From Octopus bimaculoides (lineage: Eukaryota): a DNA stretch of 50,739 bases. Below the pieces are notes generated by a model. It was given only the letters and a program-made list of their open reading frames with translations, ran no database searches and was not told the DNA's origin. Made by a program: the position numbers and the translations under genes. Below, piece after piece: positions 6,391 to 50,739 of the stretch. Position 1 is the first letter of the stretch. Each line of letters starts with the position of its first letter. The stretch lies in contig NC_068991.1 in the NCBI RefSeq assembly GCF_001194135.2, forward strand, positions 79,589,172 to 79,639,910. The letters run 5' to 3'.

Positions 6391-7330
6391 TCCACTATAT
6401 TTGTGACCGATAAGGGAGATAATACAAACACAAATAAGTGACTGGAAATATTCCTTCACTTAAAACAATTATTCTACTAAAATGTAGAAACCACACCACC
6501 ACCAGCAACTCGATGGTGGTGTTTTAAACAAGTAACCTTTGTGTACGCGCGGAACTATTTGCTTGCTTTCGTGGGCGAAATGGAAGTAGCAGGCATCAAA
6601 CTCCTTAATTGATGTTATTGAAGTAAAAGAGGAAATGTTACTAAAATGTAATTCGATCCGCACCATTCCATAAGCAAGTAACACAACTGGACAATATATG
6701 GAAACATATGCACTGACGCCCACGCATAAACACAAGACCAATTGATAAATGGTACAGAGGAATATAGTTTCACCACCCACACCCGTCACAAATCCCATAC
6801 CAGACACATACACGAATGCGAACACGCACACAGACATACATATACACATCTACACGCAGACACACACAAACATGTTCTTTCTAATATATTTACAGAATTA
6901 ACAACATCAAACATGCACGTATCCTCACATAAACACATGCACACATGCACGCACATGAATGCATACTCATACTAACACACAACAATGCACACACTCTATT
7001 TCTCTCTCCCACATTCACGAACATTCTCCTTAACAATTAAACAAATATTGAACTGAATAGCAAAGAGATAGACAGATAGACAGACCCGAGGCAAAAGTCA
7101 GGTCGAGAGGGAATATCGTTAAAGAGGTTGCGGTTGACGACGAATGAATTCTCACATACATAATTGATTGATTGACTGATTAATCAAACTATTAATCAGA
7201 TAATCGATTAGATTCTTAAATACTTAAGCAATTAACGAATAATAAAAAAAAAGTTAAATAGAACCTGGGCGTGTGTTTATTATTGGCATACTCAGGTATA
7301 AAAATACCCTCACATACAAATATATATACA

Positions 7331-7484
7331 CAACAGGCTTCTTTCAGTTTCTGTCAACAAAATCCACTTACAAAGCTTTGCTAGGCCCGTGGCTATAGTA
7401 AATGATAATAGTTAAATATGCCACGCTGTGGGATTGAACCCGAACCCATGTGGATCGGAAGGACGCTTCTTACCTCTCCTACAT
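7331..7484 (-). mobile_element. tRNA-derived SINE, family B
   Basis: ggcttctttcagtttctgtcaacaaaatccacttacaaagctttg...gccacgctgtgggattgaaccc, homologous to the 17630-17784 and 47360-47526 copies. Confidence 0.8.
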
Positions 7485-11572: not shown

Positions 11573-13791
11573 GCTAGAATTTGTACATAGCTAACCAACA
11601 ACGATATCCATACCTCTCAGATGACCGAACCCACAATGCCCTAAATCCCTAATATTTGTCGGTCAAATGTTCCCCCAATCGACGCTGATTTGGTCGGATC
11701 GTTCCTGCGACGATTGTCTGTTATTTGCCTCGGTGGCCCGTGCTCTTTCTTCAAATTCTGCCAAAGGGATCTTTGCGTTCGGCGTTTCTTGATCAATATA
11801 AACATTATTATTTCTCCGCAGTAATACGCTTTCTCACTCCCCCTATCTATTTTCTCTCTCCCTCTCTTTCTCTCCCCTCTTTCTAGTATTCTTTCCCTCT
11901 GAAAGAAATCAGTTCTGCTTCGATCTGTGGAGGAAGAGTTTCTGCCATGTTTAAGCTGGGTCATATGTCGTCCATGCTGTGAAAATCAAGATGACGACCG
12001 AATACCTCCATTACGAGTCAAAACGACGAACCGTAATATCAGATCATAACATAAGATCTTTGATCTTTCTGTCAACACCTCATATGGAAGATCGCTTCCC
12101 TAAAACGGAGGATCGTCTCATCACTCTACAAACATTATTTTGGACCACCACAAACAACTGTTGGATTTGTAATACTTTGTTTCAACCACTTTAATTCTCC
12201 ATATAGGATTTTTTGTATGTAAACATATATACATTTTTCTTTTGTATTTCATGTATTTGGTATACTTTGTATATTGACCTGCCTAACGTGCTTATCCTTA
12301 CATTTACTTCTCTACCCGATCACGTTTATACCTCTGGAGCACTACTGTCTTCTATACGGAGAATATCTGATGCTCATCTATGAACTATGAACCATAATAT
12401 ATGCATGTGCGCGTGTGTGTGTGTGTGTATGTGTGCGTGTGTGTGTCTGTGTGCATGTGTGCATGTGTGCGCGTACGTGTGTATGCATGTATGAAGGCAT
12501 TATCGTTGGCTTATCGTTCTTTTCCTTTCATTCCCTTCTTTTCTGATTCTTCATTAGGCTGGAATGCCATATGCACTGATTATGTTCTCCTTTCTTGAGA
12601 CAGTCAGTCTTTATAGTAATCACAACAAATTATGCCTGAGTCGTCGTATGTAGCTCTGATAATCTGCGGGGATTTTTTTGTGTCAGGAGCTTATTTCAAT
12701 TTGATTCACTCCTGTCTTCTTAGCATGTCTTCACGATAAATTGTTGCATTCTATATCTACATGGCAACATTCCATGGCGTTGACGACGACGTATATATTG
12801 GTATATTTATAACCATGTAACTGAATTACTTAATCCTTGTGAGTCTATTTTACCGCTATCACGAACCTCTGGCAGACGGTGATTTTATGAACAAAGTGCG
12901 TTATATAAACTAAATAAAGAAATAGCCGTTTCTGTAAATAACGTTCATACAGCTGTACTAGTTGTCAAGCCATTTAACTTTCATTTGAAATTATTGATAC
13001 AAGTAGAAAAAGAAGCTACAAATTAGGTAAACCCCGCTGTTCAAATCCATGACATTATTGTAAATTAGACATTAACAGAATTCAATATTTCCCAAGATAT
13101 TCGCCGGCAGCACATCCGTCTTCATATCGCTGTTTTGAACAAATTTAAATAAATAAATTATGAAGAATTTTCTTTCAAACAATTGATATTGACAACTAAA
13201 TTTGAAGAGAGCTGAGAAAACCATTTTATGGGTATTCGATATTGTAGAAATAGAAATCAAATATCCATCAAATTGCATCCGATAGGTTTTTGTGTTTAAC
13301 TTAATCATTTTTTGCACTTAAATTACATTGAGTGATGTAATTTTAGTATTACAGACTTGGCATCAAGACGGGTAGATATTGTAGGAGGGCTTTTGTTACG
13401 TCTAATTGCATTCAACGTTTTTTCCTTTATAACTGGAAGGGCACATATTGAATAATATACCTTACGTAGAAACAAAAACGCATTGCATAAAGCCGGGAAG
13501 ATGGTGATAGTAGAAAAGTTCTTGTTCGTAGATCTATTCCAGAAGCGTTCACCAAGAATAATCATTTACAAACATTACTAGTAAACGACGGTCCCCCACA
13601 TTACTGCTAAATTGTAATGTCTCCATCCCGCTAGTGTTAGAAATTCTTTCACCCGTCTGTGTGGTTCTTTCTGAAGAATTGCGTGTCTCATGGGATCAAA
13701 TAGATTTAACGTAGTGGAGGAAATTTTGTCTGCCAAACCTTTTCCAAAATATAGCAAGCACTAATTTATCCTACCACAAAATATAATAGAA

Positions 13792-41110: not shown

Positions 41111-42151
41111 CAACTAAAAAAAATTATATTATAATTTAATCTTCTGATATGCACCTAGTTAGAAATGTGGTGCGATAAATCGAAGGCGTTTGCATTCAGT
41201 AATCATAATATAAAATTTGAATATGATAAAGATGAGTTCTGGTGGTCTTCATGTAAGTTGCTGCTGTTATTTTCAACGTTCTAATTGTTCGCAACTTTAT
41301 AAAGCGATAGTGAATTATTGCCGATATTACAGCCACAGTTCACTGAATTTACTATATGTTAATTCGAGATTTTACTATGTGAATGTCATTATAAGAAATA
41401 TATAATATCTCATAGTGAATTAGTTTCATATGAATTGAAAATCAGCACATTATCCAATACGTAATTAAAATAATAACTATTATATTAATCCAATTTCCAA
41501 AATCTTAACCAACGGAAGATAATTAACGGTGCTAATAAAACTGATGTGAATTACAGAATAATATATTGGCATCCGACAAGAAGATTCGACAAATGGCTGT
41601 AGTTCTTGTTTCAGGCTATTCCTCTTTTACACTTAGCCAAATGTATTTATATCGAGAATTCCTTTCGCAACTATCCTATTACTTTACATTGGCATATTTC
41701 ATCCAATAAAAATGTGTGACTTGAGGCTAAAGTAGATTAACCGCATGTTTATAGAATGCAAAGTATATTGCACTGGTGAAGTGTTGTCTGCGTGTGAGTG
41801 TGTGGGTGTATACCTTCATGTACATACATATTTATATATATTTACACGCACACACACACACATACACATACACATACATACATATATGCGAACTTAAAGT
41901 TAGTTAAAATGTGTTCGTAACATTTGAACGGCTAAAGGCAAATTCACTGCAGTTACGTGGAGAAAGAAATCTCTCTTATGGTAACAAAAAGGTGTGACAA
42001 CACCACATCTGTCCAGTGCTGTCACCTGCCGGATTCCTAGACATCGATGCTTCTAGCTTCTTAACCGTTATTAATGGGAAATGCCGAAAAGGCAACATAT
42101 TTGAACAAAGCTAAAGTTCGCTTGGCGCTGATACATTCATGAATGTACATA

Positions 42152-42372
42152 CTAAGTATGTTCAAAATGTAACCATCTCTATTTTTACCACCAAAACTAA
42201 TGACACGTAGGGGAGGAAATGGTGCTACCGTTCGAACGTATATGAGAAAACTTTCGCGTCGGTGGATCAGATCAGTTTCCTGCTGTTACGCCGAGAGTGC
42301 AGACGTGTAGTACGCTCTCGTCGGATTTTCGTTTTCAAACAAGATCATCAAATGCCTCGATCAGAGACCATA
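42152..42372 (+). mobile_element. Mariner 5' end (TIR plus leader), plus orientation
   Basis: TA then CTAAGTATGTTCAAAA. The leader shares caaaactaatg, gaaactttc, tcagtt.cc.gctgttacgc, cagacgtgt and gattttcg with the reverse complement of 42800-42958. Confidence 0.65.
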
Positions 42373-42958
42373 AACCCATGTTTCATCGGGAGTGAAGATG
42401 GTTTTCATAAAATTTGATTCGTGGTTTTCACAGCATGTCCTGAGGAATTTACTTGCCGAGTTACTTCTGCTGCTCCGCCAGCTTCTTGGTGATGAATTTG
42501 GATGACACCTTCTGCACTCACTGATTCTGCGCTTATTCCAACTTCATGAGCAATTACCTGAATTGTTTCACGGTAGTCATCCATGACTATTTGCCGACCC
42601 TTCTCCATCGGTTCCTTGTTTCGGCTTCTCAACGGCCAGCCTGAACATGACTCTCTCTCTCTCTACTGAGGTGCGGTTATACTTGGAACTGCTCCAGCTG
42701 CTTTTTGCCAATGACGTCGTCGTCAGAAATTTGCTGAATCTTTTAGATGGTTTTAGCTTGAGCATCACCGGGCTTTTGGTGATACTCTGCCCGATACGTT
42801 CGGTAAATCCGAAAATCTGGCGAGCGCACACAACACGTCTGTGCTCTACGCGTAACAGCCGGGAACTGACGTGGCCTAGCGGTATGAAAGTTTCCATGCA
42901 TGCGCAGGAAGTGTGGCGTCTTTTCTCACACGGCATTAGTTTTGGCGGACACACTTCG
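42365..42958 (-). pseudogene. Mariner 5' half with decayed transposase N-terminus
   Basis: TA at 42959-42960 then CGAAGTGTGTC on the minus strand. Decayed frames give ..TIQVIAHEVGIS.., VSSKFITKKL and NFMKTIFTPDETWVYG (first catalytic D). Confidence 0.85.
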
Positions 42959-43239
42959 TATATATATTACAAAGGTGGTTTGTAATACACGGAGATAATT
43001 AGTGAACAAGCTGGATCACGTATTAAAAATCTAACATTGAACGCGGGAGGAGGGAATCTAGACCAATAAGTCTTCGTTATAGGGAATACAACAGTGGAGC
43101 TAATGAGAAGAATGAAATGATAGAAAGCCGGTTGCTATGGGCGTCAATGTTTTACAGAAGTGTTTATAAAATGTTCTTCTGCTTGACTATACAAACACAC
43201 ACACATTCACACACACACAAGCACTTATATATATATGTT

Positions 43240-44232
43240 AAATAAAATAAGGTAACAAGGCCAAGGAAATTTGATATTCCTAGGATATTTATAAATAGAA
43301 AAGTAGTCTTACAGCTGTTTCAGGGAAATAAATGATATCCCATCATCAGAGACAAGTTAAAAGAGTTTCAATAGAAGGAATTAATAGAATTCATCTTTTT
43401 AGAAGTTATTCTGGAGAGGGAGAGATATAAAAGAAATTAGATATTAATGCAGAAAGTATAAAAGGAAAAGATGAAGATAAAAATACATGTTGGATGTTAA
43501 AGTTGCTGTTCCATTATCCAAGAAATCTGTTGTGTAGAATGGGTAAAGAAGCTTCGTGTCCATGATGTGTAAAGTCCGATAAGAATTCATATGTTGTTAT
43601 TTCAAAGAACAGTTTGCAGATATTAATTCCATGTGTTGTTCATTCAAAGGTATCTTGTAGCATAAATGAATTTTGAGAATTATACTGGTAAGAGGAAGTA
43701 GATAAAAAAAGAAATGAATAGGTGAGAATATTAGAAGGAATAAAGAAATATGTATCGGAGAGAGTGGTGGTATTCATAATGGGTAGATTAAAGGTAGGGA
43801 AAGAAAAAGAAAAAGGCAAAAGAGAAAAAGAAAAAAAGCAGTGCTAGATGCTGGTCAAGATAATATAAGGGAGTGAGGAGAGGAGAGCTATCGATAGATG
43901 AAAGGAATAGGGGAGGGATAGAAAGAAGAGATAAGAGGGTAGGAAAGGAGTATGTGTGAAGAGTTGCAGGTGTGAGAAGTTACAGATGCAGGTATAGTTA
44001 AAGAATGTAGTATAGAAGGGTGGATGGAGGTAGTAGATGTGAGTGGTAAACCTCGAAAAGGAAAGGAAGGGGATGAAATGATAAGGAAGAGTGCTATGAA
44101 TTAAGGGGTGAATGTGCAGGGATGAATGGTCAAGGTTCTAAAAATAGACGAAGGCATTTATAAGAAGTCAGAGAGTGTAGTAGCTAAAGTGAAGGCGGAA
44201 ATCTATTGTGGGTTCTGATAAATCATTGACAG
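43240..44232 (-). mobile_element. Decayed Penelope-like element 3' region ending in an HHR-bearing pseudo-LTR
   Basis: The minus strand is C/T-rich with decayed frames (LPLTSTTSIHPSILHS; IMEQQL) loosely resembling PLE linker and GIY-YIG C-terminal sequence. A well-formed HHR lies near the 3' end. The protein match is weak. Confidence 0.5.
43306..43353 (-). ncRNA. Minimal type I hammerhead ribozyme
   Basis: Minus strand GTCT CTGATGA T-GGGA TATCATTTATT TCCC-T GAAAC AGCT GTA AGAC. All core nucleotides are present, stem I is 4 bp, stem II is 4 bp, stem III is the palindrome ACAGCTGT and the triplet is GUA. Confidence 0.85.
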
Positions 44233-44652
44233 AAAGAAAAAATATGTATATAGATATACACATATATATGCACCTGCGCACACGCAAGCATATATATGTA
44301 TATATATATGCACATGTGTATACACCAGCATACTCATGCATATATATACATATATATCGATACCTATATATATACACACACACACACACACACATACGAA
44401 AAATAGAAGTTGAAAATGCACTTAGAATAGTTAAAATATTTTCATTAATATATTTTATTAATATATTTCACAGTTTACACTGATTTTCAAAAGGTTCAAA
44501 TAAAAAGACATGGATTATGTCTCAGCTGTCTTGCTTCCGCTTTTCTTTATTTAGCACGCAGGCCATAACATAGAGGGGACAGCACAAGAAGAGACAAGAC
44601 ACTATTGTGCGGACATAAAACATAAAACGAATGGAAAATGAAAAAAAAATGT

Positions 44653-44719
44653 ATAATGAAATGATAATAAGGAAATGATAATAATGAAATGATAATAAGG
44701 AAATGATAATAATGAAATG
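44653..44719. repeat. 14-bp tandem repeat GAAATGATAATAA(G/T), alternating
   Basis: Units start at 44658, 44672, 44686 and 44700 and end in G, T, G, T. Confidence 0.9.
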
Positions 44720-46269
44720 GATGCATTGAACCCTCTCTCTGTTTATTTTTTGTCATTCCTTTCTTTTGAAGAGCGTAGGCTTGAAACGTAAAAGACTTTT
44801 CCAATTTTCTCGACCGCGTAAAATTAATACACTTGCTTGTTGATCATCTTACACCTGTCTTTGCTTTTTGTCTTTCTATAAATTTCAGCCATATATATAT
44901 ATATATATANNNNNNNNNNNNNNNNNNNNNNNNNNNNNNNNNNNNNNNNNNNNNNNNNNNNNNNNNNNNNNNNNNNNNNNNNNNNNNNNNNNNNNNNNNN
45001 NNNNNNNNNNNNNNNNNNNNNNNNNNNNNNNNNNNNNNNNNNNNNNNNNNNNNNNNNNNNNNNNNNNNNNNNNNNNNNNNNNNNNNNNNNNNNNNNNNNN
45101 NNNNNNNNNNNNNNNNNNNNNNNNNNNNNNNNNNNNNNNNNNNNNNNNNNNNNNNNNNNNNNNNNNNNNNNNNNNNNNNNNNNNNNNNNNNNNNNNNNNN
45201 NNNNNNNNNNNNNNNNNNNNNNNNNNNNNNNNNNNNNNNNNNNNNNNNNNNNNNNNNNNNNNNNNNNNNNNNNNNNNNNNNNNNNNNNNNNNNNNNNNNN
45301 NNNNNNNNNNNNNNNNNNNNNNNNNNNNNNNNNNNNNNNNNNNNNNNNNNNNNNNNNNNNNNNNNNNNNNNNNNNNNNNNNNNNNNNNNNNNNNNNNNNN
45401 NNNNNNNNNNNNNNNNNNNNNNNNNNNNNNNNNNNNNNNNNNNNNNNNNNNNNNNNNNNNNNNNNNNNNNNNNNNNNNNNNNNNNNNNNNNNNNNNNNNN
45501 NNNNNNNNNNNNNNNNNNNNNNNNNNNNNNNNNNNNNNNNNNNNNNNNNNNNNNNNNNNNNNNNNNNNNNNNNNNNNNNNNNNNNNNNNNNNNNNNNNNN
45601 NNNNNNNNNNNNNNNNNNNNNNNNNNNNNNNNNNNNNNNNNNNNNNNNNNNNNNNNNNNNNNNNNNNNNNNNNNNNNNNNNNNNNNNNNNNNNNNNNNNN
45701 NNNNNNNNNNTATATGTATATATATGTATGTATGTATATGCAGTGAGAGAGAGGGGGAAATTACGTAATTTTCATGGAAATCATTTCGTTCTGTGACGTA
45801 ACTGGACTTTTCATTAACGAGAACACGTTCGCACATATATCTTTCTGTATGTGTTTTAATTTTATATGGGTTTATTTCACCAAAAGTATATTGAGAACTT
45901 TTAATGATAGAATTGAGGAATCGACTACACTACAGCAATCGATAAAAAGCAGCACGGTTATAGATCGCTTAAGGGATATAAAATATGCATATAAAGATAG
46001 AACTAGGATCATGCAATGTGATAGTGCAGGTTTTAATCGCTCTGTATTAATATCCTTACCGTTTAATGCAAACGAGTTCGCTAAAATATATGTTCACATT
46101 ATAATGCATGAACGAAAGACCATTCGTTTAACTAAAAGTTCAGCATGGGTAAAAAATCTAATCACACACATTGTTTGATGTATCTATAGGATCTCATAAG
46201 AGTGCTATTTGTGATCTACTAGGTCTCTTTTTATTAGAAGTCTCTTCTTATGAAATACACTGCAATATA

Positions 46270-46621
46270 ATGAAGCAAAATATTAAAACTGAAGCATCCC
46301 AGAGATGGATCAAAAGGAAAATAGACAACGTGTCAAGCCTTGATTATTGAGATCGCCTCCAGAAACTCAAACTTTATTCCCACCAGAGTCACCATTAGCG
46401 CTATACGATTTGTATGATGTGGAAAATATTCCAGCATCACTGCTCAAATGATTTTGGCATCAACTTTAAACTTCACCCAAGGCTTGGTCCTGCTACTATC
46501 CGTCCACTACAGAAATCATGTCCGTGTCACATTAAAACACTGATATAGAACTACTTCACTAGAACTGGCTATGTTCTCTTTCAACATCATGCCAAAACAA
46601 ACAAAAAAAAGAAAAGAAACA
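46270..46621 (+). pseudogene. CR1/L2-group LINE ORF2 C-terminal remnant
   Basis: QRWIKRKIDNVSSLDY*DRLQKLKLYSHQSHH*RYTICMMWKIFQ...FKLHPRLGP matches the typical post-RT pattern Y.DRL..L.LYSL..RR.R....KI. Truncated by a gap. Confidence 0.75.
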
Positions 46622-47277
46622 NNNNNNNNNNNNNNNNNNNNNNNNNNNNNNNNNNNNNNNNNNNNNNNNNNNNNNNNNNNNNNNNNNNNNNNNNNNNNNN
46701 NNNNNNNNNNNNNNNNNNNNNNNNNNNNNNNNNNNNNNNNNNNNNNNNNNNNNNNNNNNNNNNNNNNNNNNNNNNNNNNNNNNNNNNNNNNNNNNNNNNN
46801 NNNNNNNNNNNNNNNNNNNNNNNNNNNNNNNNNNNNNNNNNNNNNNNNNNNNNNNNNNNNNNNNNNNNNNNNNNNNNNNNNNNNNNNNNNNNNNNNNNNN
46901 NNNNNNNNNNNNNNNNNNNNNNNNNNNNNNNNNNNNNNNNNNNNNNNNNNNNNNNNNNNNNNNNNNNNNNNNNNNNNNNNNNNNNNNNNNNNNNNNNNNN
47001 NNNNNNNNNNNNNNNNNNNNNNNNNNNNNNNNNNNNNNNNNNNNNNNNNNNNNNNNNNNNNNNNNNNNNNNNNNNNNNNNNNNNNNNNNNNNNNNNNNNN
47101 NNNNNNNNNNNNNNNNNNNNNNNNNNNNNNNNNNNNNNNNNNNNNNNNNNNNNNNNNNNNNNNNNNNNNNNNNNNNNNNNNNNNNNNNNNNNNNNNNNNN
47201 NNNNNNNNNNNNNNNNNNNNNNNNNNNNNNNNNNNNNNNNNNNNNNNNNNNNNNNNNNNNNNNNNNNNNNNNNNNNG

Positions 47278-47540
47278 GGACTGTACCCGGAACCATGTGG
47301 TTGGTATGCAAGCTACTTACCACACAGACAGCCACTCCTGCGCTTGTATATATATATACGACGGGATTTGTTCAGTTTCCGTCTACCAAATCCACTCACA
47401 AGGCATTGGTCGTCCCGAGGCTATAGTAGAAGACACTTACCCAAGGTGCCACGCAGTGGGACTGTACCCGGAACCATGTGGTTGGTATGCAAGCTACTTA
47501 CCACACAGACAGCCACTCCTGCGCTTGTATATATATATAC
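47278..47540 (-). mobile_element. SINE family B in tandem (one full unit plus a duplicate head, period 181 bp)
   Basis: The segments starting at 47278 and 47459 are identical over about 80 bp, including private variants (ggactgtacc, gtatgc, acagacag). Confidence 0.9.
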
Positions 47541-48889
47541 ATGAAAAGAAAACGAACTGTAAAGTGTAACACGTATCCAAAATCGGAGTCAGGTTTGGCT
47601 TCCGGAGTTGACTACAGTATCTAGTTTATTCGGACGCGAGCGTGAACCTCCCCGAAGAAATAATTATAAGCGGACAATTGGTATGCATTCAAATGTTTTG
47701 CGGGTCATCCACACGTTTCTGTAAAAAGAGTAAAATAATCATATTAGACATCTAAAAACATACATTCAATATGCATAAATTCATACGTAATACATACATA
47801 CATATATATGTGTATGGTGGGGTGCTTGTGTGTGTGTATGTGTGTTTGGTTATGCATGTATGTATGTATCGATGAATGCATGTATAAGAGAGTCCACTAT
47901 CGATTCCAACTTGGATTATTCCAGTCATGTGTATCCTCATTGTATTTCTCAGGCGAAATCATGATTTAGTGAGACGAGATTGTGTGTGTGTGTGTGAGCG
48001 TATCGAAAGAAAACACTGCGGCTTCTATTGAATTACTTGAATACGGGATTACGTGGATAGGGATTATGTTACCTTGCATTGAAAATAAAGAAATAATAAC
48101 ATTAATTTGGTACAAATCCGAAAACGTTTCACATAGAAAATATGACATTTCAATGCTGCTTCCATCGGTATCCGTGGCATTAGTAGAGAAATAGAAGAGA
48201 AACTGTTGGCAGACTTCAATCAAACAATGTGCATTGAGCTTTATAGCGGAACATTATCCGACTTGTAGAGCGTTATGATTAGTGAATAAGTTGCGTAAAT
48301 TTAACGGAGGGTATCACTGACCGTGACCTAGGTTCGTTAAATATTCGAAGCTTCTTAATTCTTGTTTTTTTTTTTAATATATGCACCTAAAGCTGAAGTT
48401 AAAGGAATGAGCGGTAGGTTTGTAATGAATCAATATTTGTGAATATGAAGCTTTTGTATATATCTACAAATAAATAAAAGATCTAAGTTTTCCCATTTTT
48501 ACAGAAAAACTACCGTGATATACGGAAATATTTCTATGTTTCTTTGGCTGGTAGGTGGAAAAATCGGTAGTTATGCTCAAACACATTTGGTTACCTTTTT
48601 CTACATCCGGGTTCCAAATTTCTCCCGCATTTAATTTTCCCCTTATAATTCTGAAGCTGATGAATTTACTGCAAATCTTTATATTCAAACAACACCCTAA
48701 GCGTTGTTGTTTTTGATCAAAAAATCTCAATTTTACGTGAACATGGCATACGTGACATAACTTAAGCGGTCTTTTGTAAGTTGCCGAAGATACTATCACA
48801 GGCAATTGTCCGTCGCATGACACCGAGGATCTGCGCCTCAAGTGCTCGCTAACCCGAGCCAAATTTTAAAGAGAAAAACAGTAACGTGT

Positions 48890-49150
48890 CATACAGTATG
48901 ATACTTAACTCCATATCATTGATGATGTCGATTGGAAGAGAAAGAAATTGAATGCTACTTGAAGTTTACGTCATTGCAGGACTTCCAACAAAATCGAAGA
49001 AAAAATCGGATTCCCTTAAAGAAACCTATTGCTTATGTGCAACAGACGAAATTTACTCCCAAATTTCATATATTTTTCAATCGTATTTTCCAAAAGAAGA
49101 CAAACTTATCGAGGCTTATTTGGTTCAGTGACGCACCAGAAACTAATTTT
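48890..49150 (+). mobile_element. Possible decayed Tc1/mariner-superfamily fragment
   Basis: ...NLSRLIWFSDAPE resembles the first-D motif IWFSDE. Nothing else confirms it. Confidence 0.25.
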
Positions 49151-50312
49151 TCTGTATGATATATTTATTAATTTAGACTAAATATTTGAAATTAAAGATA
49201 ATAGAATTTGTATGATAAAGGTTAAGTTGAAAATGAAATCAGTGGTTTTCATATCGTTAATAATAATTGATCCCATTGGTTACGATGCTAATTTCGAAAA
49301 GGCGATTCGAGAAAAACACGCCTATGATACGTCAGAGCGAATCGCTTGAAGAAATTCCAACAAATGTCACCGAAAATATTGGTGTGGAAAGAAAGCCTCA
49401 TTCTTTTTAATGATAAACTATATGAAAGTAATTTGGATACTGTTAGTCTTTCCAACCCAGTAGATTACCGGGTTCCCAACCACATCCCGTGTAAATGTAT
49501 TTATCAAATCTTCCGCTTAGACTCAACTCACAAATACAATACTATATATACTGACACAGTATTGTCTTTAAACATTTAAACTTTCACAAGAGTAACATAT
49601 TATACTGTTTCCAAACACGGCGATAACATTTCTTTAGAAGTGAAATAAATTAAATAGCATTTCGTGAATATATTAGGAGCCACATTACTGTGGTTTGAAT
49701 CCAAGTGAGAACGAACTGAAATATTCTCCACAGAATATTGTTCCTCTCTCTTCAACGTTACATTTTAAAGGAAATCATTTTATTCACATCATAACAATTT
49801 AAGAAGTCATAATAGCTTAAATAATTATTAACTTTCAAAAGGGTAAATGGCTACGTGTTCCATCAGTGTGAATATTTCATCAAAACTAACTTTATTAAAA
49901 CGCATTATTATAAATTTTAAATTAAGGATATGAAAATAATAATATCAAGCGTAAAAGCGAAAACAAATAACTATGTAAAGTTAATTAAATGAACGAAAAG
50001 TATTAATGTAGCAATTGCAGTTATGATAAATGTTGTTCTTAATTAGATATCATAGATTTATTACAAAAATAGACAAACGTTAAGCAGAAATATCCTTTAT
50101 TAATGGATATTCCGTAATTAGATTGTTAAGTTTTCTGATCGCATCAGAAATGGATTAATATCAACCCTTGTGAAAAGTAAGCTATGTAAAAAATTTTTAA
50201 CAAATATAATATCAAATTCATTGAATAATATTTGATATGTTTCAGAAATAGTAAATTATTGCACTTCAATTCATGCATACATAAATACATACCTATCTAT
50301 CTATCTATCTAT

Positions 50313-50739
50313 CTAAATTGTCGTGGCTAAATTGTCGTGGCGTCTCTTATATTCCTTCTGGGTTAGTGGCGTACATCGGCTGGTAATATGCCATTCGGTT
50401 TCACCGTTTTTTCCACAGATTCTGCACTTATCACTTTCTGCTGTGTTGTCTATTCTGTATTTTATGTAGTTTGTTCTTAGTGCTTGCTCTTGGGCAGCAC
50501 AGATTAGAGCCTTCGTTTCACTTTTAGTCATCCACAGTCATCTTTTTTCTCTGTCTGTCTTATCTTCATCATCCCTATGAAATTGACCATGCATTCTTTT
50601 CTTTACTCACCTATTTTCAGTTTCATTCGTTTTCAATTTCTTGTATAGTGCTTTATCTTTGCAATCTTTCATCCTACACAAGCCTGACCTTCCTACTTTT
50701 AATAATTGCGGTTCTGTAGCATTTTTTACATACCATTCT
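50313..50739 (-). pseudogene. R4/Dong-type (RLE) non-LTR retrotransposon fragment, post-RT region with CCHC knuckle
   Basis: KKRMHGQF...ETKALICAAQEQALRTNYIKYRID...CRICGKNGETEWHITSRC...EYKRRHD. Contains stops and continues beyond the window end. Confidence 0.85.

What the first reader, a model, noticed from the sequence alone, without database searches (positions are those of the whole stretch)
43306..43353. Near-canonical 48-nt minimal type I hammerhead ribozyme (minus strand)
RNA: GUCU CUGAUGA UGGGA-uaucauuuauu-UCCCU GAAAC AGCU GUA|AGAC. The conserved core is complete and stems I and II form. Stem III is the self-complementary ACAGCUGU, typical of dimer-acting PLE hammerheads. Predicted cleavage is between 43310 and 43309. 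The only defect is U.U at the base of stem II. It lies at the 3' end of a decayed PLE-like region.
Basis: partly seen in the sequence, partly recalled or inferred. Interest (0 to 1): 0.85.

Follow-up and report, generated by a model that had tools for sequence, protein, structure and literature searches.

The report
Solitary type I hammerhead ribozyme motif
A real but ordinary hammerhead self-cleaving RNA motif of the kind that Penelope-like retroelements and retrozymes scatter by the thousand through animal genomes sits here as a single orphan copy that probably cannot cut without a partner.

Summary
The 48-nt motif is in the sequence exactly as described (minus strand 43353..43306). It has every conserved hammerhead core position, a 4-bp helix I, a 4-bp helix II and the palindromic helix III ACAGCUGU. 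Cleavage is predicted between 43310 and 43309.

Chance is a poor explanation. A loose descriptor expects about 0.03 hits per window, and a literature-based one with a palindromic helix III expects 1e-5 to 5e-4.

The "defect" (U10.1·U11.1) is a documented natural variant. It is the best-tolerated mismatch at that position, and it occurs in axolotl HHR_Amex2 retrozymes, which cleave best as dimers.

A pattern built from its core and helix III retrieved many covarying type I hammerheads from metazoan contigs in metagenomes.

The context claim is not supported:
- No RT or GIY-YIG domain appears in any translated frame nearby.
- There is no second copy, tandem array or pLTR-like repeat.
- Rfam Hammerhead_1 does not score it, but it also misses a bulged Penelope-type control.

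Folding favours the hammerhead only as a dimer, and no partner lies within 1.5 kb.

Verdict: a genuine hammerhead-derived relic, and a new member of a well-known kind. Interest is low.

One oddity remains unexplained. The 12-mer GAAACAGCTGTA occurs three times in the window, against 0.006 expected.

The parts
43306..43353 (-). Complete 48-nt type I hammerhead motif with helix I open
   Evidence: Sequence read. It is the only hit of the structural descriptor in the window. It is the top hit of covariance model R1, at 16.8 bits.
43350..43353 (-). Helix I 5' strand, GUCU (positions 2.4-2.1)
   Evidence: Pairs with AGAC at 43309-43306 in 4 Watson-Crick pairs. The next position outward is U/U, so the helix does not extend.
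43343..43349 (-). Core box CUGAUGA (C3-A9)
   Evidence: Exact match to the consensus CUGANGA. It contains two in-frame AUG codons, A6-G8 and A9-G10.2.
43322..43342 (-). Helix II hairpin: U10.1·U11.1, then GGGA/UCCC, with the 11-nt loop UAUCAUUUAUU. Two further A-U pairs are possible inside the loop.
   Evidence: Sequence. RNAfold forms the 4-bp GGGA/UCCC stem in every predicted structure.
43319..43321 (-). Core G12 A13 A14
   Evidence: Exact match to the consensus.
43311..43318 (-). Helix III, ACAGCUGU (A15.1 to U16.1). It forms 2 bp plus the tetraloop AGCU in a monomer, or an 8-bp intermolecular helix in a dimer.
   Evidence: Perfect palindrome. An 8-bp duplex forms in the cofold MFE. At least 60 covarying natural type I hammerheads retrieved from metagenome contigs have the identical helix III.
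43309..43310 (-). Predicted scissile bond: 3' of A17 (43310) and 5' of A1.1 (43309)
   Evidence: Follows from hammerhead numbering, which places cleavage 3' of H17. Not tested experimentally.
43306..43309 (-). Helix I 3' strand, AGAC (positions 1.1-1.4)
   Evidence: Complement of GUCU at 43353-43350.
43190..43237 (.). (TA)n then (TG)n microsatellite beginning 73 nt 3' of the cut site. It is a possible 3' boundary of the insertion that carried the ribozyme.
   Evidence: Tandem Repeats Finder and sequence. Weak evidence only: 23% of window positions lie within 100 nt of such a tract.

Best explanation
This is a genuine hammerhead-derived sequence. It is a solitary type I hammerhead of the metazoan retroelement class (PLE pLTRs and their non-autonomous retrozyme derivatives). 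It was most likely left by a 5'-truncated or decayed insertion of which only non-coding sequence survives.

If transcribed from the minus strand, the RNA would form helix II on its own. Its helix III is too weak (2 bp plus a tetraloop) for a stable active monomer. Catalysis would need a second copy, so that the palindrome ACAGCUGU forms an 8-bp intermolecular helix III (a double hammerhead), with cleavage 3' of A17 (43310|43309). No partner lies nearby, so this copy is probably inactive or barely active in cis, and so a fossil.

What is shown: the motif, its improbability by chance, the dimer thermodynamics, and the existence of natural relatives with the same helix III and the same U·U feature.

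What is inferred: retroelement origin, PLE rather than retrozyme parentage, and present inactivity.
For: The core is complete and all three helices are present.

Chance expectation is 0.03 per window for a loose descriptor. With the literature criterion of a palindromic helix III it is about 1e-5 to 5e-4. Conditioned on the 3' 12-mer it is 1.7e-6.

A pattern made from the candidate's core and helix III (CTGATGA N10-34 GAAACAGCTGTH) returned at least 120 metagenome loci:
- At least 60 form a 33-nt class of type I hammerheads.
- In 28 distinct ones, 8 of 12 pairs show compensatory changes, and 96.7% of cells are paired against about 30% for slid controls.
- Some score at or near the Rfam RF00163 threshold of 34 bits (42.9, 33.9 and 31.1 bits).
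- They sit on contigs that carry animal genes such as Sprouty and family C GPCRs.

L016 and L048 carry CUGAUGA-U-GG..., the same start of helix II as the candidate. L016 has a second hammerhead in inverted orientation beside it, an arrangement described for PLEs (PMC4209133).

Literature:
- PLE min-HHRs have a 4-5 bp helix I without a defined loop 1, an extended helix II, a nucleotide between A9 and G10.1, and palindromic 15.2-16.2 and loop 3. Most copies are single scattered motifs from truncated PLEs.
- U10.1·U11.1 occurs naturally and is tolerated. The axolotl HHR_Amex2 family has a U·U at the helix II base with a 2-bp helix III and tetraloop, and cleaves far better as a dimer.

The double-hammerhead structure scores -23.3 kcal/mol against a dimer MFE of -24.1. 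The monomer hammerhead fold scores -3.7 against -8.1.

The geometry is compatible with a PLE 3' end. In the Anolis PLE, the ORF start overlaps the hammerhead, reverse transcription starts 85-92 nt past the cut site, and insertions home to AT-rich DNA. Here AUG codons lie in the core, and an AT-rich microsatellite starts 73 nt past the cut site.
Against: - No RT or GIY-YIG signal appears in six frames of 41500-44909 or in the minus frames of 45711-50739.
- There is no second copy, tandem array or pLTR-like repeat. The one 91-nt similarity (43350-43437 against 44424-44511) is matched or beaten by 41 of 200 shuffles.
- Rfam finds no hammerhead family even at E <= 10 in a 351-nt search. However, RF00163 also misses the bulged control L016.
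- The monomer fold is not better than shuffles (z = -0.36).
- If the U after A9 is read as the PLE-type bulge, the U between C11.1 and G12 becomes an atypical core insertion.
- Copy number and covariation in the source genome could not be examined, because no eukaryotic genome collection is available and the organism was not identified.
- The adjacent microsatellite is not informative, since 23% of positions lie near one.
Confidence: 0.7

Rival explanations
1. Chance resemblance: an AT-rich stretch happens to satisfy the hammerhead descriptor and has no ribozyme ancestry.
For: - A loose descriptor yields about 0.35 hits per Mb and strand in random sequence, which is hundreds per Gb-sized genome.
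- Rfam does not score the motif.
- The fold energy is no better than shuffles.
- It is a single copy with no family evidence in the window.
- The most conserved helix II pair is a mismatch.
Against: - The palindromic 8-nt helix III lowers the expectation about 500-fold. It is a criterion taken from the literature and is identical to that of many natural hammerheads.
- The strict expectation is about 7e-6 per window and under 1 per Gb.
- The conditional probability of the 5' half and both helices is 1.7e-6.
- Among real sequences carrying the same 19-nt signature, 45 of 120 pass the helix I and II test, and nearly all of these belong to the covarying hammerhead class.
Confidence: 0.07
2. It is part of a still-structured, possibly active element (a PLE with pLTRs, or a retrozyme array) whose partner hammerhead or ORF is hidden in an assembly gap or collapsed by the assembler.
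For: - The window has 18 N runs. The nearest are at 44910-45710 and 46622-47276 on the upstream side.
- PLE tandem and inverted structures are known to break short-read assemblies (PMC8557442).
- The motif itself is intact, and its dimer fold is near-optimal.
Against: - Retrozyme units are 170-400 nt and would place a second hammerhead within the 1.56 kb of contiguous sequence upstream or the 5.5 kb downstream. None is there.
- Sequence on both sides of the gaps has no RT or EN signal.
- The 890 nt upstream is CT-rich, low-complexity and non-coding.
Confidence: 0.1
3. It is an exapted solitary ribozyme that acts in cis on a host transcript, for example in an intron or UTR. This would be analogous to the isolated type I hammerheads of amniote introns.
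For: - Isolated type I hammerheads are reported in mammals (PMC7229834).
- The core is uninterrupted although the surrounding sequence looks decayed.
Against: - No gene model, exon or conservation evidence is available.
- The monomer fold is disfavoured by 4.4 kcal/mol, and helix III has only 2 bp.
- No loop 1 / loop 2 tertiary contact can be defined, because helix I is 4 bp and open.
- Rfam HH9 and HH10 are not matched.
Confidence: 0.04

Closest known systems
Minimal type I hammerheads of Penelope-like elements (min-HHRs; Cervera & de la Peña 2014, PMC4209133)
   Same: - Type I topology.
- Short 4-5 bp helix I with no defined loop 1.
- Larger stem-loop II.
- A U directly after A9.
- Palindromic helix III and loop 3, implying action as a dimer.
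- Mostly found as single scattered copies from truncated elements.
- AT-rich or microsatellite neighbourhood.
   Different: - No PLE ORF or pLTR can be shown here.
- G10.1-C11.1 is flush with G12 in those motifs. Here a U lies between C and G12, which reads as a U·U pair.
- Family membership in the source genome is untested.
HHR_Amex2 ribozymes of axolotl non-LTR retrozymes (Cervera & de la Peña 2020, PMC7229834)
   Same: - U·U mismatch at the base of helix II.
[quoted passage not shown]
- Weak as a monomer, efficient as a dimer.
   Different: - Those sit in 350-bp tandem repeats with loop 1 / loop 2 contacts.
- This copy is solitary, with an open 4-bp helix I and an 11-nt AU-rich loop 2.
Canonical invertebrate type I hammerheads (Rfam RF00163 Hammerhead_1), e.g. 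the 33-nt class retrieved here on metazoan metagenome contigs (L003, L024, L109 and others)
   Same: - Identical core.
- Identical helix III, GAAAC-AGCU-GU.
- Type I topology.
   Different: - Those have a 6-bp helix I, a 4-bp G-C-closed helix II with a 6-nt loop (UAACAA-like) and C17. They score 31-43 bits with RF00163.
- The candidate gets no RF00163 hit.
- A model built from that class aligns only the candidate's core and helix III, at 16.8 bits.

Membership tests
Hammerhead ribozyme, type I | Conserved core: C3 U4 G5 A6 N7 G8 A9, G12 A13 A14, A15.1-U16.1, H17 | tested here: met
   CUGAUGA, GAA, A...U and A17 all present at the correct spacing.
Hammerhead ribozyme, type I | Three helices around the core, with helix I open and helices II and III closed by loops | tested here: met
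   Helix I has 4 WC pairs. Helix II has 4 WC pairs and an 11-nt loop. Helix III has 2 bp and a tetraloop, or 8 bp in a dimer.
Hammerhead ribozyme, type I | G10.1-C11.1 closing pair of helix II | tested here: not met
   It is U10.1·U11.1 here. This is a documented natural and active exception (PMC3088659; PMC7229834).
Hammerhead ribozyme, type I | Score at or above the Rfam RF00163 gathering threshold (34 bits) | tested here: not met
   No hammerhead family was reported at the gathering threshold or at E <= 10 in 351 nt. Controls: canonical L109 scored 42.9 bits and L003 scored 33.9 bits. The bulged PLE-type L016 was also missed.
Hammerhead ribozyme, type I | Loop 1 / loop 2 tertiary contacts that give fast cleavage at physiological Mg2+ | tested here: inconclusive
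   Helix I does not extend beyond 4 bp and has no definable loop 1. PLE min-HHRs also lack this contact.
Hammerhead ribozyme, type I | Site-specific self-cleavage giving 2',3'-cyclic phosphate and 5'-OH ends | not testable with these tools
   Needs in vitro transcription or RNA end mapping.
PLE-associated hammerhead (in a pLTR) | Lies in a pseudo-LTR next to an ORF with a telomerase-like RT and a GIY-YIG endonuclease | tested here: not met
   No Pfam family in six frames of 41500-44909 or in the minus frames of 45711-50739. No direct repeat. The literature notes that most genomic copies are solitary, so this weakens but does not exclude PLE origin.
PLE-associated hammerhead (in a pLTR) | Unpaired nucleotide between A9 and G10.1, followed by G10.1-C11.1 | tested here: inconclusive
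   The U after A9 followed by G-C pairs fits. However, it requires an extra U between C11.1 and G12, which is not part of the described consensus.
PLE-associated hammerhead (in a pLTR) | Palindromic 15.2-16.2 and loop 3 | tested here: met
   ACAGCUGU is a perfect 8-nt palindrome.
PLE-associated hammerhead (in a pLTR) | Belongs to a multi-copy consensus family with covariation within the genome | not testable with these tools
   No eukaryotic genome collection is available. The exact pattern scan of metagenome contigs returned 0. There is no further copy in the window.
Metazoan non-LTR retrozyme | Tandem repeats of about 170-400 bp, each unit carrying a type I hammerhead | tested here: not met
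   Tandem Repeats Finder shows no array covering 43250-43640. There is no second hammerhead in the window.

The most novel reading that the evidence does not exclude
The solitary hammerhead is kept by selection as a cis- or trans-acting RNA processing element. For example, it might cleave a host transcript only when it pairs through its palindromic helix III with transcripts of other dispersed copies. The three copies of GAAACAGCTGTA in 50 kb would then mark a dispersed set of half-ribozyme or partner sites.
Probability: 0.03. Interest if true: 0.55.

Novelty: new member of a known kind. Interest (0 to 1): 0.2.

Why it matters
If the reading is right, it matters little. The locus is one more dispersed copy of a ribozyme class already catalogued in thousands to more than 100,000 copies per animal genome.

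Its modest value is as a marker that the source genome once hosted a hammerhead-bearing retroelement (a PLE or a PLE-derived retrozyme). It is also another natural example of the U10.1·U11.1 variant combined with a dimer-type helix III.

It also shows that Rfam's Hammerhead_1 model misses this class of motif. That is relevant to anyone annotating ribozymes in invertebrate genomes.

Tried and rejected
1. Rfam at the gathering and E-value thresholds gave no hammerhead hit. I do not treat this as decisive, because RF00163 also missed the bulged control L016.

2. The second CTGATGA...GAAAC match, at 17276-17308, has no hammerhead helices.

3. Self-comparison of the locus with the window gave only microsatellite hits. 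The best non-microsatellite similarity (43350-43437 against 44424-44511, 66% over 91 nt) looked like a possible pLTR-type direct repeat. It was matched or beaten by 41 of 200 dinucleotide shuffles and was rejected.

4. Pfam scans for RT or GIY-YIG found nothing. ORFs on hammerhead-bearing metagenome contigs were host genes, not PLE proteins, so I obtained no PLE query protein.

5. Identifying the organism failed:
   - The exact mariner ORF is not on record.
   - The best homologues are at most 82% identical and sit on unnamed ENA metagenome contigs.
   - Homologues of the RT-tail fragment are unnamed.

6. An exact-pattern scan of metagenome contigs for the candidate's own helix II version returned 0.

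7. A split hammerhead, pairing the two other GAAACAGCTGTA sites with distant CUGANGA boxes, gave only chance-level matches.

8. A literature text search for the 11-mer returned only primer sequences. No supplementary text is held for PMC4209133.

9. tRNA, SINE-head, promoter and terminator scans found nothing relevant.

10. The open frame that starts at the core AUGs (MMGYHLFP*, then 45 more open codons) resembles the Anolis PLE layout, in which the ORF starts inside the hammerhead. The open run is not statistically unusual once the microsatellite is discounted, so I kept it only as a weak inference.

11. I considered a whole-library protein search with the 32-aa post-stop peptide. I did not run it, because of the low prior and high cost.

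Full report
**Observation**

The minus strand from 43353 to 43306 reads GUCU-CUGAUGA-UGGGA-UAUCAUUUAUU-UCCCU-GAAAC-AGCU-GUA-AGAC. In hammerhead numbering:
- C3-A9 occupy 43349-43343.
- G12-A14 occupy 43321-43319.
- A15.1 to U16.1 form the palindrome ACAGCUGU at 43318-43311.
- A17 is at 43310.
- Helix I (GUCU/AGAC) is four Watson-Crick pairs.
- Helix II is GGGA/UCCC above a U·U.

A structural descriptor that I wrote finds this as the only hit in the window on either strand, and finds none in the reversed window.

**Is it more than chance?**

- A deliberately loose descriptor (helix I of at least 4 bp, helix II of at least 3 bp with a free first pair, any 2-bp hairpin as helix III) gave 7 hits in 20 Mb of first-order Markov sequence trained on the window. 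That is about 0.03 per window, and an analytic estimate agrees within a factor of two.
- The literature uses a palindromic helix III as an independent mark of authenticity (PMC4209133). Requiring it, together with helix II of at least 4 bp, lowers the expectation to about 7e-11 per position and strand. That is about 7e-6 per window and under one per Gb.
- I also assumed that the 3' 12-mer is common in this genome for some unrelated reason. Even then, the probability that a given site has a correctly spaced CUGANGA with both helices is 1.7e-6 (5 of 3,000,000 simulated sites).

Chance is therefore a poor explanation.

**Independent evidence from other sequences**

The candidate's exact helix II version was absent from metagenome contigs.
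- At least 60 of these form a 33-nt class with a 6-bp helix I and a 4-bp helix II.
- In 28 distinct members, 8 of 12 pairs carry compensatory changes. 96.7% of cells are paired, against 22-34% when partners are slid.
- Rfam RF00163 scores them at 31-43 bits, around its threshold of 34.
- The contigs carry animal genes such as Sprouty and family C GPCR domains.

So GAAAC-AGCU-GU is a recurrent helix III of natural metazoan type I hammerheads. Of the 120 sequences carrying the 19-nt signature, 45 pass the helix I and II test, and nearly all of these belong to this class.

Two loci, L016 and L048, begin helix II with CUGAUGA-U-GG, as the candidate does. L016 has a second hammerhead in inverted orientation beside it. 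That arrangement is described for PLEs.

**The "defect"**

U10.1·U11.1 is documented. Perreault et al. found natural hammerheads whose helix II starts with this mismatch, and noted that it supports more activity than any other mispair (PMC3088659). The roughly 60,000 HHR_Amex2 ribozymes of axolotl retrozymes combine a U·U at the base of helix II with a 2-bp helix III capped by a tetraloop. They cleave 22% in an hour as monomers and much better as dimers (PMC7229834).

The U after A9 can instead be read as the unpaired nucleotide conserved in PLE min-HHRs. That reading leaves an atypical extra U before G12.

**Folding**

- The monomer MFE (-8.1 kcal/mol, z = -0.36 against shuffles) is not the hammerhead fold, which scores -3.7.
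- Two copies cofold to -24.1 with the 8-bp intermolecular helix III. The full double-hammerhead structure scores -23.3.
- A canonical control behaves in the same way.

It also means that a lone copy is unlikely to cut efficiently.

**Context**

The window is an AT-rich (about 31% GC), heavily gapped eukaryotic draft. It has 18 N runs, 103 (TA)n or (TG)n tracts, a mariner remnant and an RT-tail fragment.

- *No PLE protein signal.* Six-frame Pfam scans of 41500-44909 and minus-frame scans of 45711-50739 gave no family at all. The mariner ORF, used as a positive control, was detected.
- *No second copy.* I found no second hammerhead, tandem array or significant direct repeat. The 890 nt upstream is CT-rich, low-complexity and non-coding.

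The PLE-like region is therefore not demonstrated. What remains is compatibility:
- Most PLE hammerheads occur as solitary motifs from truncated elements.
- PLEs prefer AT-rich or microsatellite targets.
- In the one biochemically studied PLE, the ORF start overlaps the hammerhead, and reverse transcription starts 85-92 nt beyond the cut site.
- Here the core contains in-frame AUGs. The frame is closed after eight codons by the UGA formed by U11.1-G12-A13. A (TA)n(TG)n tract starts 73 nt beyond the cut site.
- That adjacency carries little weight, because 23% of positions lie within 100 nt of such a tract.

**Classification**

The motif meets the core and helix definitions of a type I hammerhead. 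It fails the G10.1-C11.1 rule and the Rfam threshold, and self-cleavage cannot be tested here. Its shape is closer to PLE min-HHRs (short open helix I, long AU-rich stem-loop II, palindromic helix III) than to canonical retrozyme ribozymes. A covariance model built from the canonical class aligns only its core and helix III (16.8 bits, top hit in the window). That score is partly circular, because those sequences were retrieved with the candidate's own signature. The defining tandem-repeat feature of retrozymes is not met.

**Unexplained**

GAAACAGCTGTA, which runs from G12 through A17, occurs three times in the window: the candidate, 29879-29890 (+) and 31838-31827 (-). The expectation is 0.006, while CTGATGA is not enriched. 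The other two sites have no upstream core, no helices and no flank homology. One lies at the edge of a 70-nt imperfect inverted repeat. They may be dead 3' halves of other hammerhead families or a frequent word of unknown origin. Only a genome-wide count can tell.

**Verdict**

This is a real hammerhead-derived motif, most likely a solitary relic of a PLE or PLE-derived non-autonomous retroelement, and probably inactive without a partner. It is a new member of a well-known kind. I put interest at about 0.2 rather than 0.85.

Noticed in passing
window 29879-29890 (+), 31827-31838 (-), 43310-43321 (-); also 12949-12956: The 12-mer GAAACAGCTGTA (hammerhead G12 to A17) occurs three times in 46 kb of non-N sequence, against 0.006 expected. 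The two extra sites have no hammerhead 5' half and no flank homology. A fourth ACAGCTGT, at 12949, is the 10-nt palindrome TACAGCTGTA.
   Followed up: partly
window 31832-31916: An imperfect inverted repeat of about 70 nt (82% over 71 nt). One of its arms ends in the GAAACAGCTGT word, and a CAGCTG lies in the opposite arm (31920). It looks like a hairpin or a MITE.
   Followed up: partly
window 19829-20763 (+): A mariner/Mos1-type transposase remnant split over three frames. The C-terminal 171-aa piece hits Pfam Transposase_1 (E = 2e-17). Its best database relatives are at most 82% identical.
   Followed up: partly
window 50316-50537 (-): A 74-aa fragment typical of the C-terminal tail of non-LTR retrotransposon reverse transcriptases. 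Its homologues are 60-74% identical, and one is annotated with PF13966 (zf-RVT).
   Followed up: partly
window 32135-32193, 47348-47400, 7312-7372, 17610-17662: A short dispersed repeat (80-91% identity over 53-61 nt) is present in at least four places and is likely a SINE-like family. A second recurring peptide-like signature appears at 663-881, 24365-24652 and 26939-27355.
   Followed up: no
window 42262-42985: A block richer in GC (about 0.40) with long overlapping ORFs on both strands and no Pfam hit. By eye it resembles a degenerate transposase N-terminal region.
   Followed up: partly
window, whole: This is a draft-quality eukaryotic assembly: 18 N runs (10-828 nt, 4842 N in all), about 31% GC, and 103 (TA)n or (TG)n tracts. 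The organism could not be identified with the available collections.
   Followed up: partly
L016 about 310-410 (metagenome contig Ga0194135_10079970); L003 1021-1065 (-) and 1471-1515 (+): Metagenome-derived eukaryotic contigs carry pairs of type I hammerheads in opposite orientation. L016 has the CUGAUGA-U-GG bulged form, which Rfam RF00163 fails to detect.
   Followed up: partly
window 17276-17308 (-): The only other CTGATGA...GAAAC spacing match in the window. It lies inside an inverted repeat (ctccagccttcatc / gatgaaggctggag) and lacks hammerhead helices.
   Followed up: yes
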